Shown here in pieces: positions 54,609 through 63,819 of a stretch of 64,000 nt of DNA. The notes beneath the pieces were generated by a model. The model made no database searches. It had not been told where the DNA came from and worked only from the letters and a program-made list of their open reading frames with translations. The stretch is from Macrostomum lignano (lineage: Eukaryota). Position 1 is the first letter of the stretch. The number at the start of each line of letters is the position of its first letter. The translations under genes were made by a program, and so were the position numbers. The DNA lies in the NCBI GenBank assembly GCA_002269645.1, contig NIVC01000013.1:744001-808000 (forward strand), given 5' to 3'.

Positions 54609-54702
54609 ATGGATCGCACAAGAGTCGGATTGCCTAACGCTGCAAGCATATTGTTAATTGCACTGCTGCTGACAACTAGCGAAATCTACGTCACCCTGTC
54701 AG
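54609..54702 (+). CDS. Ig-like type-I membrane protein, exon 1 (signal peptide MDRTRVGLPNAASILLIALLLTTSEIYVTLS)
   Basis: ATG just after a TTTAG acceptor; hydrophobic core; CAG|GTAAG phase-1 donor. Confidence 0.72.
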
Positions 54703-55001
54703 GTAAGAATCTCAACATACTTGCATAGCGAAATGGAATAACTATAGAAATGTTCAGGGACTTACTCAATCAAAGGGCATGCTCCCCCAAATAGCTCAAA
54801 GTAGCTTTTGACTTTATGCAGTCACTATTTTAATTAGTTTCTTAAGGAAAAAAGATTTTTTTCAAACCAAAGAAGGTATCAGCCCTGAAAGCCTGCTATT
54901 CAGCCTAAGATATCAGATCCACAATGAGCTTTGGCATCGAGACTCATCTTTAAGGCTTAACCCCAACTCTTATTTTGATTCTTGGCCTATCTTGACTCTA
55001 A

Positions 55002-55560
55002 GCAACTCCCCCATGAGCCTTGACATCTCAGCAACTCCCCATGAGCCTTGACATCTCAGCAAATCCCCCATGAGCCTTGACATCTCAGCAAATCCCCCAT
55101 GAGCCTTGACATCTCAGCAACTCCCCATGAGCCTTGACATCTCAGCAACTCCCCATGAGCCTTGACATCTCAGCAACTCCCCATGAGCCTTGAAATCTCA
55201 GAAACTCCCCATGAGCCCTGACATCTCAGCAACTTCTCCGTGAGCCTTGACATCTCAGCAACTCCCCATTGAGCCTTGACATCTCAGCAAATCCCCCATG
55301 AGCCTTGACATCTCAGCAAATCCCCCATGAGCCTTGACTCTCAGCAACTCCTCCATGAGCCTTGACATCTCAGCAAATCCCCCATGAGCCTTGACATCTC
55401 AGCAACTTCTCCATGAGCCTTGACATCTCAGCAAATCCTGCATGAGCCTTGACTCTCAGCAACTCCTCCATGAGCCTTGACATCTCAGCAACTCCTTGAG
55501 CCTTGACATCCCAGCAACTCCCCCATGAGCCCTGACATCTCAGCAACTCCCCATGAGTTT
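55002..55560. repeat. ~28-29-bp minisatellite GAGCCTTGACATCTCAGCAACTCCCCAT
   Basis: Direct reading; intronic. Confidence 0.94.
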
Positions 55561-56713
55561 TTAGACATCTTGGAAATTCTAACAATCCACACTCTCATGT
55601 CCAAGGACTCGTTAGACTTTGAAATTTAATTCTTAATTTTAATTTGATTTAATTTTAATTCAACCATGACTGCGAAACCATTGAGCTATCGTTTTTTGTG
55701 CTCCAACTAGCTGTATACATGTAGCTAGTGTTGTATAGTGTAGTATAGGCAGTGAAGAGACACCGAGAAAGAGAGTGAAAGAGGCTACTGCACTCTGTGC
55801 ATGTTTTTTGAGCTGAGTCACCCACCATTTGCAAAAATGCGGGACAGTCTTCCTGCCTGCTGTTTGCGGCTCACGTACGCTTGTGAAAAACAGTTTTTGA
55901 TACTCTGAATAATAACTCTGTGACCTGAATGAGACGAAAAAGCCCCTGCAATTATATGATTTGGGCGAATCTTTGTGATTTATTAATCTTCAACAAAATG
56001 GGCTATGGCTGGTAGACACTGTTCTTTACTACATGTGCTCAATGTTTGAAAGAGGAAGGAAGTTTAGCCTCTTTGTAGGTTTAGTGTTAAGCTTAGCCAG
56101 AGAACTATACCTGAATATAAAATAATCTTATTCATTGTGTCAGAGAAAGACACGTCACTTAATTCAACCAAATGTTGCGAGTAAAATTGCAAGCTTGCGT
56201 TTTGTGGTAATGCTATCCAACACGTTCTGAAGTTCGTTTTCGAGCGTAGCCACCAACAAAGATTACAGTTAATACAGAATAGGACCTTTGTCTAAGTCAA
56301 CGGTAGGCAACATTTTTACCTCAAGGGCTAGAGGAGGGCAAGAGAGGAGAGAGAAGAGAGAAAAGAGAAAGGAGGTGAGATAATTATGGAGGAGAGAGGA
56401 GAGAGGAGACGAGAGGAGGGATGAACTCGAATAGGGGAGAAAAGAGAAGGGAGTGGATAGGAGAGAAAAGAATGAGATGAGAGAGAGAGGAGAGAAGAGG
56501 AGAGGAGAGAGTGGAGAGAGGAGATTAGAGAGAAAATAGCTGAGAAGAGACACAAGCCTTGAGCGGGCCGAATTGCTATTGTGAAGTTTCAAAGGGCCGG
56601 ATACTCGTAGAGAGGGCTCGTAAGTCGTTCTTGCTTTCGTCTTGGGAGTTGCAACACGACCCAGAAATTCTCTTACAACAATGTAGCTTTTAACCCGATC
56701 CCCCCACACACAG

Positions 56714-57238
56714 CAGCGGCGGTACTTCAAGACACCCGAATGGCCGTCCCGAGCTCCGACCAGTCCATTAAGCTCAAAGTCGAAATCACCGACACAAAAT
56801 TCCACTTGACCTGCGAAGTCACCGGCATCAACGGTCCAGTAGACGATCAGAAGATCCGATTTTTCTGTCCGGCAATCGAAAAACTCGGAGATCCCTGCTT
56901 CTCAGACTGCAATCCACACTGTTCGATGAGTTCTGACAAATGCCTACTAGCCCACCCGGTGCTGAACAGCTCCGTCCGGTGCAAAGAGTCCAAACCGTTT
57001 CCCGGTGCCAAATTCATCGACCTGTATTTCGACAACAGTCAGGCCGAACTAGCTGGCGAATGGTACTGCCGGTTCCAGACTGCGATCAGCTCGAAAACGT
57101 CAATTAGCAGGAGAGAAAAAAATCCACCTGCTGTCCTGGCAACTACGGCAGCTCCGCAGATCAGCGCGGCCACGAAGAAGCCGGTGCCGCAGCCGGTGCC
57201 CACCAATCCGCCGCCTGTTGTGGTGCTACCGCCAACAA
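56714..57238 (+). CDS. Ig-like type-I membrane protein, exon 2 (Cys-rich Ig-like domain plus Pro/Thr stalk)
   Basis: FHLTCEV (B-strand Cys) and LAGEWYCRF (F-strand G-x-W/Y-x-C) bracket six extra Cys; CAGCAG acceptor and A|GTGAGA donor, phase 1-1. Confidence 0.78.
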
Positions 57239-57707
57239 GTGAGACACTCAGGCTCTGGCATAGTACTCAAATTATCTAGGGAACATCCCTTAGTGTAATT
57301 GAAACTTTTTAAAGAATATTGAAAACATTGCAATCTCATTTGAAACTTTCTTATCTTCACCAAAATTGCATCTTGGTTAATCTTTCCGGTACAATATTTT
57401 ATTAGTCTCGCACTTGGCGCTTGTCACTTCGCAGAATACCTGGCATACTCAGCCAGGTGGGTTGAATAGGGTGACACTAAAATAGATAAAATAAAGCATA
57501 ATTAAATAAAGAATGAAGAGAGCAGCATACTGGAGTGTCAGTGAGTGCTTGAGAGTGTAGTCACTACAATGAGAAAAGACCCACATCGGACTATATAGAT
57601 GCTCGTTGATATTACTGCCGCCTACGCACGAACCTTGCTTGTATTTTCAGTTCAATATTTTGTAGTTTGAAATGACAAATGACACAATATTTCCTTCTAA
57701 TTTTCAG

Positions 57708-61386: not shown

Positions 61387-61456
61387 ATACATATCAGTCC
61401 AGTCTCCACCCAACACAGGTTAATTTTTCGCCCAAAACCACACCGATCTTGCACAG

Positions 61457-61570
61457 TCCTGCCGTTCGCTCGAGCCGATTTCGTATTCGGAGCTCCGGCC
61501 CTGCTGCTGGCGTCATTGATAGTGAATCTGGCCTTCTGCATCCGGTGCTGTCTGGCAAAGTACTACGTCT
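61457..61570 (+). CDS. Ig-like type-I membrane protein, exon 4 (transmembrane helix [24 protein letters not shown])
   Basis: TTGCACAG acceptor, GTGAGT donor, 114 bp, phase 1-1; ~21-residue hydrophobic stretch. Confidence 0.75.
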
Positions 61571-61702
61571 GTGAGTTCGAATATCTGATCCTGCCTCGGG
61601 TGTTTTGCATGATCTACTAGAGTCGACTCTTGACAACCTCGAGGCAAATACCTGATCTAGAAATATGAAAAGTAAATAAATATTCGCGGGAGGGGGGTTG
61701 GC

Positions 61703-61880
61703 CATCGGTGACATCGGTGACATCGGTGACATCGGTGACATGGGTGACATGGGTGACATCGGTGACATGGGTGACATCGGTGACATCGGTGACATCGGTG
61801 ACATGGGTGACATGGGTGACATCGGTGACATCGGTGACATCGGTGACATCGGTGACATCGGTGACATCGGTGACATCGGT
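61703..61880. repeat. 9-bp minisatellite CAT(C/G)GGTGA, ~20 units
   Basis: Direct reading. Confidence 0.96.
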
Positions 61881-63094
61881 CCCACAACCAGCGCTGACGG
61901 CAGTTAGTCCGCAGACTCCTGAGCACATGCAAGCGCGCCGATACTGTGCGCAGGCACACGCGCTCAAACACACCCTCCCATGGGGTGTTCAGCGGCCCTT
62001 TGACTTTCTAATAGTCAGACAGGTACACTCTCTGTGCCCTCGAGGGTTGGCCTCCATAGGTGTGAATTCCACATCAACAGTCAAGCGAATTTTGTTCACA
62101 AGTCCCAAATAAACTGTGGGAATCTACATTGCACAGGTTCGATGCAGTGCACTTCTAAATTAACTTTGAGCCAGTATGCGTTGAAGCGCATTTCCTGAAA
62201 TTTTTCCATGCAGTTTCATATTTTTCGCCTGCAGACACAACAGAGAGACCCACTTAGCATAAAACTGAGTCCAATAGTTACATAATTTGATACACTCCTC
62301 TTCTCCTTCCTCTAACTTTTTTACCGTTAGAGATTTCAGCATTTAGCTTGTAGTTCATGCAGAAATGCAGAAGCTAGAAATTGTCTAATCGATCGAACTG
62401 ATCCCGAACTATAATATCACCAAACTGTGTCCCCGATCTCCCGGATCTTAACTTGTTCTGGACGCCAGAACCTGGACGAGCTAAAGCTGGCTCGTGGTAA
62501 CAATGTGAATGATGCGTATTTAATAGGTCTCCAACCAAAGCGACATTATATGGAGAATGCCTCTGACTCAGCTACAGGCTCAGTTCATCCTTACTCACTG
62601 GATGATAAATTGAGGCTCCTAGGGACTCGCAAGCATAAGCAAAGGAGACCTAAGAGCTTAAATTGTGTCGCTCTCGTCCCTGTTGTTAAAGTCACTGTTG
62701 CGAATAATAATGCGATTACGTCATCATGCCATCGGAAAGAGCCGCAGCGGGGGGGTTGAATTTCTCATTATTCACCGCCACTAGCTAAAGGCCTCTTGAA
62801 GAAGATCTTCTATTTATTTTCTTTTTCTTGTCTCTGTGACAAGCCGCACGCAATGATGTAGGTAAGAGTGGCCTTGAGATGTAGTTAGGGTTCATTCCAG
62901 GTCAGAATAGCCGGGTGTCGAATCCTGATCTTGGCGACAGTAGACCTGCAGACAGGCACGAAGGACAGATGCCTCAGCGCTGGCTGTAGGACGATGCTCA
63001 TAAGCCCTCCAACGAATATTTGTTGCTTATAAATCTATAATTTCCTAACTTTGAACCCTTTCATCACCAAACCCAAAATCTGTCCTCTCTTCAG

Positions 63095-63819
63095 CGCTTC
63101 GACGTCGCAAGCGGGAGCCGCCCGGCTGCCTAGCCCACTGCCTCTGCGTCAGCACTGTCCAAGTGGTGGAGAAGGACTCAGCCAACCAAGCTGGCAGCGG
63201 CGCCACTGGGGCAGGCGGCGAGGACATGTACGAGGAGGTTCTTCCTCGGATGGCTCGTCATCAGCCGCAACGCTCGTCCGTGCGCACGATGGAGACAACT
63301 TACATCGAGGCGCCAGGGATGCACCGGTCTCGAACGCTCCCGCCGGTTGTTGGTCAAACCCAAGCCAGTCTATACTACCTGCAGGGAGTGTCCGACTCAA
63401 TGTCGCGCATACTTTACGACGATGTGCCGCCAGCATCGTCGCGTCACAGTTCCCGACCGTCGAGTCCGTACGGACAGTTAATGTCTGGCCGGAACTCGCA
63501 TTCCCGCAGTTCGCTTCGCGGCGTTGGAGCCAAGCAGCAGCAGCTGCAGCAGCAGTTTGCTGGCGGCGGGGTGAACAACTCGGCCAACTCCATCCCGGCT
63601 GTTCCAGAAGAATCGACGCCGTTTGTAGCCGACGCCCAGCCCGAAGAAGACGATCAGGACAACGGGTCGGATTATTCGGGTGCAACTCGACTCGAGCTGA
63701 GCAGGATGATGCTGCGCAAGGCGGACACCCTGCTGAGGGAAGCCAACTCGTTGCTGAGAGACACAGCGCATGGAGACGCAGCAGGGGAGGGTGGCAACCA
63801 GCTGCACTCTGCTGACTAG
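63095..63819 (+). CDS. Ig-like type-I membrane protein, exon 5 (cytoplasmic tail with tyrosine motifs)
   Basis: CTCTCTTCAG acceptor at 63094; phase 1 gives SLRRRKRE stop-transfer and runs in frame into ORF 63163..63819 to TAG. The five exons total 1542 nt (513 aa + stop). Confidence 0.78.

What the first reader, a model, noticed from the sequence alone, without database searches (positions are those of the whole stretch)
54609..63819. Unannotated single-pass receptor: cysteine-expanded Ig-like domain with ITIM-like and SH2-type tyrosine motifs
Seen: five exons, all introns phase 1, join into 513 aa: signal peptide; a domain with LTCEV...GEWYC bracketing six extra Cys (CP-x8-C-x3-C-x3-C-x6-C-x11-C); Pro/Thr/Ser stalk; TM helix; juxtamembrane Cys clusters (CIRCC, GCLAHCLC) with RRRKR; tail with MYEEV, ILYDDV and SPYGQL; C-terminal amphipathic helix (LELSRMMLRKADTLLREANSLLRD). 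Knowledge: ILYDDV and SPYGQL match the ITIM consensus (I/V/L/S-x-Y-x-x-L/V); YEEV and YDDV resemble Src- and Nck-type SH2 ligands. Inference: a lineage-specific adhesion or immune-type signalling receptor with a novel Ig variant. The ORF track shows only disconnected fragments. A CAGCAG tandem acceptor at 56711-56716 allows a one-residue isoform.
Basis: partly seen in the sequence, partly recalled or inferred. Interest (0 to 1): 0.7.

Follow-up and report, generated by a model that had tools for sequence, protein, structure and literature searches.

The report
Flatworm-specific Ig-like membrane receptor gene
This is a real, expressed gene of the flatworm Macrostomum lignano, already in GenBank as a "hypothetical protein"; it encodes a single-pass membrane protein with an unusual disulfide-stapled antibody-like domain and one cytoplasmic tyrosine motif kept across free-living and parasitic flatworms, and no member of its family has been studied.

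Summary
It is not unannotated: it equals GenBank PAA94197.1 (BOX15_Mlig009626g1, Macrostomum lignano), a model derived from RNA-seq. The gene has a 99%-identical second copy and at least two paralogue groups with the same exon plan. An exhaustive profile search found relatives only in Platyhelminthes (Macrostomum, monogeneans, trematodes, cestodes), all uncharacterised.

The eight ectodomain cysteines are invariant or nearly so. AlphaFold2 (pLDDT 95) plus Foldseek give an Ig V-type sandwich, yet no Pfam Ig model detects it. Also conserved are the transmembrane helix with an Asn, the juxtamembrane Cys clusters and the C-terminal helix.

Of the three tyrosine motifs:
- ILYDDV is ancient (consensus Y-D-D/E-V-A).
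- MYEEV is kept only within Macrostomum.
- SPYGQL is not conserved.

Conservation lies at +1 to +4, not at −2. That fits an Nck-type pYDxV SH2 site or a YxxΦ sorting signal better than an ITIM.

Verdict: observation confirmed, interpretation partly supported. The gene is a lineage-restricted IgSF-type adhesion/signalling receptor. I rate it a new variant of a known kind, of moderate interest.

The parts
54609..54702 (+). Exon 1: start codon and signal peptide (aa 1-31, first base of codon 32); donor GTAAGA
   Evidence: same exon in second copy L002
56711..56716 (+). CAGCAG tandem (NAGNAG) acceptor. The annotated model uses the upstream AG (exon starts 56714); the downstream AG would delete one Ala (SAAAV to SAAV)
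   Evidence: the same CAGCAG occurs in the second copy
56714..57238 (+). Exon 2 (phase 1-1): Ig V-like domain plus the start of the Pro/Thr/Ala stalk
56761..57117 (+). Ig V-like ectodomain, aa 48-166. The B-strand C65 and F-strand C150 (GEWYC) bracket six further conserved Cys (C83, C93, C97, C101, C108, C121) in a helix / beta-hairpin / helix segment that replaces the C'-C'' region
   Evidence: AF2 pLDDT 95.1, pTM 0.86; Foldseek V-domain hits; Cys invariant or >=90% in 23-27 family members; coordinates
57708..57791 (+). Exon 3 (phase 1-1): stalk, aa 207-235; donor GTAAGT
   Evidence: homologous stalk exon in paralogue
61457..61570 (+). Exon 4 (phase 1-1): TM helix (aa 243-265) with conserved N258, and the CIRCC cysteines at the cytosolic face
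63095..63819 (+). Exon 5: RRRKR, the conserved CLxxCLCVSTVQV cluster, the disordered tail and the stop codon TAG
63226..63240 (+). MYEEV (Y318): conserved only among Macrostomum relatives (QYEEL in P0002, TYEEL in P0011)
63325..63342 (+). RSRTLP (aa 350-355): matches the 14-3-3 mode-1 pattern RSx[pS/pT]xP. It is identical in paralogue group P0002 and not kept in P0003
   Evidence: the 14-3-3 pattern is from general knowledge
63409..63426 (+). ILYDDV (Y380): the one cytoplasmic linear motif conserved from Macrostomum to monogeneans, trematodes and cestodes (Y-D-D/E-V-A)
63463..63480 (+). SPYGQL (Y398): matches the ITIM pattern but is not conserved in any paralogue or orthologue examined
63688..63762 (+). 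C-terminal amphipathic helix (aa 471-495). It is nearly invariant in three M. lignano paralogue groups, and a similar helix ends the Cichlidogyrus orthologue
   Evidence: helix 471-499; hydrophobic moment 1.4 against 0.61+/-0.31 for shuffles

Best explanation
The locus is the expressed Macrostomum lignano gene BOX15_Mlig009626g1. It encodes a type I membrane glycoprotein of a family found so far only in Platyhelminthes. Shown: a signal peptide; one divergent Ig V-like domain whose C'-C'' region is replaced by a compact segment holding six extra conserved cysteines; a Pro/Thr/Ser stalk; a TM helix with a conserved Asn; two conserved cysteine clusters on either side of a polybasic stretch; and a largely disordered tail. 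The tail carries one anciently conserved motif, phi-phi-Y-D-D/E-V-A, and (in Macrostomum and a monogenean) a C-terminal amphipathic helix. Inferred mechanism: the Ig-like domain binds a ligand or a counter-receptor at the cell surface. The six extra cysteines presumably form three additional disulfides that stiffen the domain. The juxtamembrane cysteines are S-acylated and, with the basic patch, hold the tail base on the inner leaflet. On engagement, a Src-type kinase phosphorylates Y380, and in Macrostomum also Y318 of YEEV. The pYDDV site then recruits an SH2 adaptor of the Nck type, as the YDxV sites of nephrin do, linking the receptor to actin regulation. The C-terminal helix supplies a second, constitutive docking or dimerisation surface. 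My confidence is about 0.9 that it is a real IgSF-type single-pass surface protein of a flatworm-restricted family. It is about 0.4 that the conserved tyrosine works as a phosphotyrosine SH2 docking site, and about 0.25 that the partner is specifically Nck.
For: Gene reality: the model is identical to GenBank PAA94197.1, and that annotation comes from a genome-guided RNA-seq transcriptome (PMC5730564). The 5-exon, all-phase-1 plan is conserved in the second copy and in a paralogue of 41% identity. The two copies differ by 11 synonymous and 5 non-synonymous changes, none in a conserved module. Family: 29 hits at E<1e-3 in 1.84 billion representatives, and every named one is a flatworm protein; further cestode and schistosome members appear. 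Fold: AF2 gives pLDDT 95.1 and pTM 0.86. Foldseek PDB top hits are all Ig V domains (VH, VHH, VL, SynCAM2 Ig1) with probability 1.00 and TM 0.5-0.62. C65 lies on strand B and C150 on strand F. The eight Cys are invariant or >=90% conserved. Tail: Y-D-D/E-V-A is found in Macrostomum (ILYDDV), Cichlidogyrus (SIYDEVAS), all trematodes (HV[IV]YDDVA), Taenia (TVYDDVAS) and Spirometra (TIYDDLSA). Two acidic Y[DE][DE][VLI] motifs are far above chance (P=0.0002). Phospho-YDxV is a documented Nck SH2 ligand, and nephrin signals through three such motifs (PMC3507883, PMC4238058 citing Blasutig 2008, PMC11247170). Flatworms possess an Nck homologue, SmNck2 (PMC5289644). The C-terminal helix is invariant across paralogues that are otherwise 31-41% identical.
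Against: There is no direct evidence of surface localisation, glycosylation, acylation, phosphorylation or any binding partner. No Pfam Ig model detects the domain, and the profile search of PDB sequences gives only sub-significant Ig hits, so Ig membership rests on a predicted structure. Only one YDxV motif is conserved, against three in nephrin. YDDV also fits the YxxPhi endocytic signal and loosely the ITIM pattern. Several sister subfamilies in parasites lack the motif altogether. No expression or phenotype data were found.
Confidence: 0.55

Rival explanations
1. This is the reader's main reading: an ITIM-bearing inhibitory 'immune-type' receptor. Phosphorylated ILYDDV and SPYGQL together recruit a tandem-SH2 phosphatase of the SHP type, which dampens signalling.
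For: Both motifs match [ILVS]xYxx[LVI] and lie 18 residues apart. The trematode VVYDDV and monogenean SIYDEV versions also match the pattern. Single-IgV proteins with ITIM tails exist (MPZL1/PZR, from general knowledge).
Against: SPYGQL is absent from all paralogues and orthologues, so no conserved tandem exists. The -2 residue that defines an ITIM varies (I, V, S, T, A), whereas +1, +2 and +4 (D, D/E, A), which an ITIM does not require, are fixed. The pattern is degenerate: 0.36 matches are expected per shuffled tail and P(>=1)=0.31.
Confidence: 0.12
2. The conserved YDDV is an unphosphorylated YxxPhi sorting signal read by AP-2 mu2. The protein would then be a constitutively recycling surface or cargo receptor rather than a phosphotyrosine signalling scaffold.
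For: Y-D-D-V fits Y-x-x-Phi, and the motif sits in a disordered tail. One copy is enough for sorting, which matches the single conserved copy.
Against: YxxPhi does not demand acidic +1/+2 or Ala at +4, yet these are conserved across the phylum. A second acidic tyrosine motif (YEEV/YEEL) in Macrostomum resembles SH2 ligands. The two roles are not mutually exclusive.
Confidence: 0.2
3. It is a structural adhesion or junction component comparable to angulins/LSR or MPZ. A single Ig domain mediates homophilic contact, palmitoylated juxtamembrane cysteines target it to a junctional membrane domain, and the tail merely anchors a scaffold through the C-terminal helix.
For: The architecture matches: IgV, stalk, TM, a Cys cluster next to the membrane, and a long disordered tail. 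The best non-antibody structural match is the adhesion domain SynCAM2 Ig1. The most strongly conserved cytoplasmic elements in Macrostomum are the Cys cluster and the helix.
Against: There is no sequence match to the Pfam LSR family or any other family. This reading does not explain phylum-wide conservation of Y-D-D-V-A. The C-terminal helix is not evident in trematode and cestode orthologues.
Confidence: 0.13

Closest known systems
Nephrin (IgSF adhesion receptor signalling through YDxV motifs to Nck)
   Same: It is an IgSF type I membrane protein with a disordered tail. Acidic YDxV tyrosine motifs, when phosphorylated, dock the Nck SH2 domain and drive actin assembly.
   Different: Nephrin has eight Ig domains plus an FN3 domain and three YDxV motifs. 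This protein has one atypical Ig domain and one conserved YDDV. No sequence homology was detected.
MPZ / MPZL1 (PZR): single-IgV, single-pass proteins, PZR with two ITIMs
   Same: One V-type Ig domain, one TM helix, a basic juxtamembrane region and tyrosine motifs of the form phi-phi-Y-x-x-phi (general knowledge).
   Different: There is no detectable sequence similarity. The PZR Ig domain is canonical and Pfam-detectable, with no six-Cys insert. Here the second ITIM-like motif is not conserved.
LSR / angulin / ILDR family
   Same: A single Ig-like V domain, TM helix, cysteine-rich juxtamembrane segment (palmitoylated in angulins, from general knowledge) and a long disordered cytoplasmic tail.
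   Different: No hit to the Pfam LSR family or any other model even at E<=10. The Cys patterns differ, and this family has only been found in flatworms.
SynCAM/nectin-like Ig1 and antibody V domains (structural neighbours)
   Same: The same V-type beta-sandwich by Foldseek (3m45 SynCAM2 Ig1, VH/VHH/VL; probability 1.00, TM 0.5-0.62), with the B-F cysteine pair and a G-x-W/Y-x-C F strand.
   Different: Identity is 9-16% and rmsd 4.6-7 A. The C'-C'' region is replaced by a helix / hairpin / helix segment holding six extra cysteines, and there is no conserved strand-C Trp.

Membership tests
Immunoglobulin superfamily (V-type domain) | Two-sheet Greek-key beta-sandwich of about 100-120 residues | tested here: met
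   The AF2 model of aa 48-166 has pLDDT 95.1 and strands A, B, C, (C'/C'' hairpin), D, E, F, G. All 50 listed Foldseek PDB hits are complexes or structures containing Ig V-type domains. This is a predicted, not solved, structure.
Immunoglobulin superfamily (V-type domain) | Conserved Cys on strand B and Cys on strand F in a G-x-[YW]-x-C context | tested here: met
   C65 lies on strand 60-68 and C150 on strand 146-152 in G146-E-W-Y-C150. G146 is >=90% conserved and C150 invariant across the family. The pairing itself was not verified because no coordinates were available.
Immunoglobulin superfamily (V-type domain) | Recognition by curated Ig-clan sequence models (Pfam ig, I-set, V-set, Ig_2/3) | tested here: not met
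   The full protein gives no Pfam family at E<=10. None of 23 family ectodomains hits an Ig model at E<=1. The family profile against PDB sequences gives only sub-significant hits (E 0.09-1.4), though most are Ig domains aligned over strands E-F.
Immunoglobulin superfamily (V-type domain) | Domain encoded by a symmetrical phase 1-1 exon | tested here: met
   Exon 2 is flanked by phase-1 introns here, in the second copy and in paralogue P0002. That this is typical of IgSF genes is general knowledge.
ITIM-bearing inhibitory receptors | Cytoplasmic [ILVS]-x-Y-x-x-[LVI] motif(s) | tested here: inconclusive
   Two matches are present (aa 378-383 and 396-401), but the pattern is expected 0.36 times per shuffled tail, with P(>=2)=0.049 and P(>=1)=0.31.
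ITIM-bearing inhibitory receptors | Motif, including the -2 hydrophobic residue, and usually a second motif, conserved in orthologues | tested here: not met
   SPYGQL is not conserved anywhere. The -2 position of the conserved motif is I, V, S, T or A, and conservation lies at +1 to +4 instead.
ITIM-bearing inhibitory receptors | Phosphorylation-dependent recruitment of SHP/SHIP phosphatases | not testable with these tools
   Needs biochemistry.
Nck-docking YDxV receptors (nephrin type) | Cytoplasmic Y-D-x-V motif conserved in orthologues | tested here: met
   YDDV or YDEV occurs in Macrostomum, Cichlidogyrus, 15 trematode sequences and Taenia; Spirometra has YDDL. The YDxV-Nck link is from the literature.
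Nck-docking YDxV receptors (nephrin type) | Multiple YDxV motifs acting cooperatively | tested here: not met
   There is a single conserved YDxV. The second acidic motif (YEEV) is Macrostomum-only and is not YDxV.
Nck-docking YDxV receptors (nephrin type) | Tyrosine phosphorylation and Nck SH2 binding | not testable with these tools
   Only plausibility can be shown: a flatworm Nck homologue (SmNck2) exists.
LSR / angulin (Pfam LSR) | Match to the LSR family model covering the TM and Cys-rich segment | tested here: not met
   No Pfam hit at E<=10.
Thyroglobulin type-1 / ML / Sushi domains (names that UniRef gives some family members) | Match to the corresponding curated domain models | tested here: not met
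   No such Pfam hit in the query or in 23 family ectodomains. The automatic names are mutually inconsistent.

The most novel reading that the evidence does not exclude
An ancient, Platyhelminthes-only receptor family uses a disulfide-stapled Ig V-like domain that is invisible to sequence models. It couples cell-surface recognition to the actin machinery through one phosphotyrosine site (pY-D-D-V-A to an Nck-type adaptor) conserved from free-living Macrostomum to schistosomes, flukes and tapeworms. It would then be a flatworm-specific adhesion/signalling axis with no host counterpart, tractable by RNAi and transgenesis in M. lignano.
Probability: 0.2. Interest if true: 0.55.

Novelty: new variant of a known kind. 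Interest (0 to 1): 0.35.

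Why it matters
The gene is already in GenBank, so nothing new comes from finding it. What this work adds is the family behind it. The family spans the phylum, is absent (as far as HMMER can see) from other animals, and carries only 'hypothetical' or contradictory automatic names.

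Three points give it some value:
- It is a clean example of an Ig-fold domain that curated sequence models miss but structure prediction recovers.
- The tail holds one linear motif conserved over the whole rhabditophoran radiation, which gives a concrete, testable signalling hypothesis.
- Members exist in all major parasitic flatworm groups and apparently not in their hosts, while a transgenesis-capable free-living model carries the orthologue.

It is not a categorically new kind of molecule. Single-pass IgSF receptors with tyrosine motifs are commonplace.

Tried and rejected
- **Full protein against Pfam and PDB.** The Pfam scan found nothing at E<=10. PDB sequence search gave one meaningless hit.
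- **Ectodomains against Pfam.** A scan of 23 family ectodomains gave only scattered noise and no Ig, thyroglobulin-1, ML or Sushi model.
- **Family profile against PDB sequences.** Only sub-significant Ig hits came back.
- **Profile of the C-terminal helix against PDB.** Nothing was significant, so no known helix-motif family can be named. I considered a paxillin LD-motif or coiled-coil resemblance from memory only and did not adopt it.
- **Full-length AF2 model.** Confidence was low (pLDDT 41), so I used it only for helix and strand positions.
- **Word-indexed homologue search with the ectodomain alignment.** It returned only five cestode proteins.
- **Literature.** No paper contains Mlig009626. 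Neither that ID nor the paralogue IDs appear in the supplements of PMC5816591. A general search found nothing on this family.
- **Transcript contig for fragment P0011.** None is on record.
- **Pseudogene or artefact.** Rejected on the RNA-derived annotation, the conserved exon plan and the synonymous-biased divergence.
- **Disulfide connectivity.** It could not be read because model coordinates are not exposed.

Full report

Joining 54609-54702, 56714-57238, 57708-57791, 61457-61570 and 63095-63819 on the + strand gives 1542 nt. That is 513 codons plus TAG. Every intron has GT..AG borders and is in phase 1.

- a hydrophobic N-terminus;
- LTCEV (aa 63) and GEWYC (aa 146) bracketing six further cysteines;
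- a Pro/Thr/Ala-rich stalk;
- a 23-26-residue hydrophobic segment at aa 243-268;
- CIRCC, RRRKR and GCLAHCLC;
- MYEEV (Y318), ILYDDV (Y380) and SPYGQL (Y398);
- an amphipathic C-terminal helix at aa 471-495, with hydrophobic moment 1.4 against 0.61±0.31 for shuffles.

The only slip in the description is the last Cys spacing, which is 12 residues rather than 11. The CAGCAG acceptor is at 56711-56716. Using the second AG would remove one Ala from SAAAV, next to the likely signal-peptide cleavage region.

**2. Where it comes from, and whether it is unannotated**

The 513-aa product is 100% identical to GenBank PAA94197.1, "hypothetical protein BOX15_Mlig009626g1", from Macrostomum lignano (UniProt A0A267H9L8).

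The paper describing that assembly states that the GenBank annotation was made from a genome-guided transcriptome. It was built with StringTie/TACO from RNA-seq plus a de novo transcriptome (PMC5730564). "Unannotated" is wrong with respect to public databases. "Functionally unannotated" is right.

**3. Evidence that it is a functional gene**

A second copy (PAA63717.1, contig NIVC01001818.1) has the same five exons and the same phases. Its CDS differs at 17 of 1542 nt. Eleven changes are synonymous and five non-synonymous, and none falls in a conserved module. The introns are 2-14% diverged, and intron 3 is 3665 bp in one copy against 1103 bp in the other.

Paralogue group P0002 (509 aa, 41% identity, three copies) also has five exons with all introns in phase 1. 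They split the protein at the same module boundaries: signal peptide | Ig | stalk | TM | tail. A third group (P0003, 465 aa, 31% identity) and fragments of probably a fourth (P0008, P0011) exist.

**4. The family**

An exhaustive HMMER search of 1.84 billion representative proteins used a profile of the Macrostomum sequences. It gave 29 hits at E<1e-3. Every hit that carries a name is from Platyhelminthes:
- Monogenea: Cichlidogyrus, Protopolystoma.
- Trematoda: Schistosoma spp., Trichobilharzia, Heterobilharzia, Fasciola, Fasciolopsis, Paragonimus, Opisthorchis, Clonorchis, Calicophoron, Echinostoma.
- Cestoda: Taenia, Anoplocephala, Hymenolepis, Rodentolepis, Spirometra, Sparganum, Schistocephalus, Dibothriocephalus.

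All are "hypothetical", "unnamed" or "expressed conserved protein". The few automatic UniRef names contradict one another (Ig-like, thyroglobulin type-1, ML, Sushi, muscleblind, C2 tensin-type) and have no Pfam support. No paper was found on any member.

**5. The ectodomain**

Across 23-27 family members, six cysteines are invariant (C93, C97, C101, C108, C121, C150). C65, C83, P84 and G146 are at least 90% conserved.

With that alignment, AlphaFold2 models aa 48-166 at pLDDT 95.1 and pTM 0.86. The modelled strands are:

| Residues | Element |
|---|---|
| 49-56 | strand A |
| 60-68 | strand B, with C65 |
| 79-82 | strand C |
| 119-124 | strand D, with C121 |
| 131-138 | strand E |
| 146-152 | strand F, with C150 |
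| 160-162 | strand G |

Between strands C and D lies a helix / β-hairpin / helix segment (aa 84-117). It carries C93, C97, C101 and C108.

Foldseek against the PDB returns only Ig V-type domains at the top: antibody VH and VL, nanobodies and SynCAM2 Ig1. Probability is 1.00, TM-score 0.5-0.62, E-value from 2e-4, and identity 9-16%.

By sequence alone the domain is invisible. No Pfam model hits the protein at E≤10, or any of the 23 ectodomains at E≤1. A family profile against PDB sequences gives only sub-significant hits, although most of them are Ig domains aligned over the E-F strands.

I could not assign the disulfide pairs because model coordinates are not exposed.

**6. Membrane-proximal modules**

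The TM helix contains a conserved Asn (N258). It ends in F-C-x-R-C, which is present in most family members. After a basic stretch comes C-L-x-x-C-L-C, which is also widely kept. In the Macrostomum paralogues CLCVSTVQV is invariant.

Cysteines in these positions are typical S-acylation sites. That is an inference from general knowledge and was not tested.

**7. The tail motifs**

The full-length AF2 model is disordered for aa 268-470. The motifs fare differently on conservation:

- **SPYGQL** is not conserved in any paralogue or orthologue.
- **MYEEV** is kept as QYEEL in P0002 and TYEEL in P0011. It is not found outside Macrostomum.
- **ILYDDV** is conserved across the phylum. Versions seen are ILYDDV (P0001, P0003), ALYDPV/ALYDTV (P0002 group), SIYDEVAS (Cichlidogyrus), HV[IV]YDDVA[GA]G (all 15 trematode orthologues examined), TVYDDVAS (Taenia) and TIYDDLSA (Spirometra).

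For ILYDDV the conserved positions are Y, +1 D, +2 D/E, +3 V and +4 A. The −2 position, which defines an ITIM, varies (I, V, S, T, A).

Shuffling the tail shows that the ITIM pattern is nearly expected by chance, with a mean of 0.36 matches and P(≥2)=0.049. Two Y[DE][DE][VLI] motifs are not chance (mean 0.019, P=0.0002).

Phosphorylated YDxV is a documented ligand of the Nck SH2 domain, and nephrin signals through three such motifs. A schistosome Nck homologue has been described. YDDV also fits the YxxΦ sorting signal, which I cannot exclude.

Some sister subfamilies in parasites lack the motif (for example P0015, P0018, P0022-24). The orthologue group of the window's gene is therefore the YDDV-bearing branch.

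The C-terminal helix is nearly invariant in the three Macrostomum paralogue groups, and a similar helix ends the Cichlidogyrus protein. It has no detectable relative in the PDB.

RSRTLP (aa 350-355) matches the 14-3-3 mode-1 pattern and is shared with P0002.

**8. Most likely mechanism**

Shown: this is a type I single-pass protein with one divergent Ig V-like domain. It belongs to a flatworm-restricted family and has conserved membrane-proximal cysteines and one ancient acidic tyrosine motif.

Inferred:
- The Ig domain mediates ligand or counter-receptor binding.
- The cysteine clusters are acylated.
- Y380 is phosphorylated and recruits an SH2 adaptor, with Nck the best-fitting candidate.
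- The C-terminal helix is a second docking or dimerisation element.

The rivals are an ITIM/SHP receptor, a YxxΦ-driven recycling receptor, and a purely structural junctional adhesion molecule. They are weighed in their own sections.

**9. Comparison and novelty**

Functionally the closest analogues are nephrin (IgSF with YDxV to Nck), MPZL1/PZR (single IgV plus tyrosine motifs) and angulins/LSR (single IgV, palmitoylated Cys cluster and a long disordered tail). None is a detectable homologue.

The protein qualifies as IgSF by predicted fold, by the B-F cysteines and by the phase 1-1 exon. It fails the sequence-model criterion.

I class it as a new variant of a known kind. It is a lineage-restricted, sequence-cryptic, disulfide-stapled Ig receptor family that exists in databases only as hypothetical proteins. 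Interest is moderate at 0.35. The finding is solid and gives a testable hypothesis in a tractable model, but it would not surprise a specialist.

Noticed in passing
window 57877-61386 (intron 3): A 3.5-kb tandem array of a 21-nt unit (GAGAGGTAGAGAGCTCACAGA, about 163 copies) fills most of intron 3. The near-identical second gene copy has an intron 3 of only 1103 bp, so the array has expanded or contracted since the duplication.
   Followed up: partly
window 54991-55557 (intron 1) and 61703-61880 (intron 4): Two further intronic tandem arrays: a 29-nt unit with 20 copies and a 9-nt unit (CATCGGTGA) with about 20 copies. Both create long spurious ORFs on either strand.
   Followed up: no
window 44917-45510 (-) and probably 37968-38879 (-): A cyclin gene lies upstream on the opposite strand. 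The first ORF hits Pfam Cyclin_N (E 9.7e-06). The second looks like a further cyclin-box exon followed by a Ser/Arg/Ala-rich tail, which is cyclin-L-like by eye.
   Followed up: partly
window 30946-34333 (-): Three long minus-strand ORFs (183-259 aa) rich in Ser/Ala/Pro have no Pfam hit. They are probably exons of another unidentified gene.
   Followed up: partly
window 3121-4129, 6075-6759, 12894-14102, 18598-19239, 23531-25141, 26348-27662, 41390-42888: Much of the window is short-unit tandem repeat. One example is a unit read as IYLS that recurs at three places. These repeats give ORFs of 150-536 aa that are artefacts of the repeats, not genes.
   Followed up: no
window 63325-63342 (aa 350-355, RSRTLP): This matches the 14-3-3 mode-1 pattern RSx[pS/pT]xP and a basophilic kinase site. 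It is identical in paralogue group P0002 and absent in P0003 and in parasite orthologues.
   Followed up: partly
window 54596-54608: A T-rich stretch ending in AG lies 1 nt upstream of the start codon (..tcgtttag|a|ATG). In a species where about 39% of genes are SL trans-spliced (PMC5730564), this could be a trans-splice acceptor. I did not test this.
   Followed up: no
family members P0003, P0017, P0027, P0032, P0058 (not in window): UniRef's automatic names for members of this one family are mutually inconsistent (thyroglobulin type-1, muscleblind, C2 tensin-type, ML domain, Sushi, Ig-like). No Pfam hit supports any of them.
   Followed up: yes
window 56959-56967 (aa 116-118, NSS): This is the only N-glycosylation sequon in the ectodomain. 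It lies in the Cys-rich insert and is not conserved in the paralogues.
   Followed up: partly
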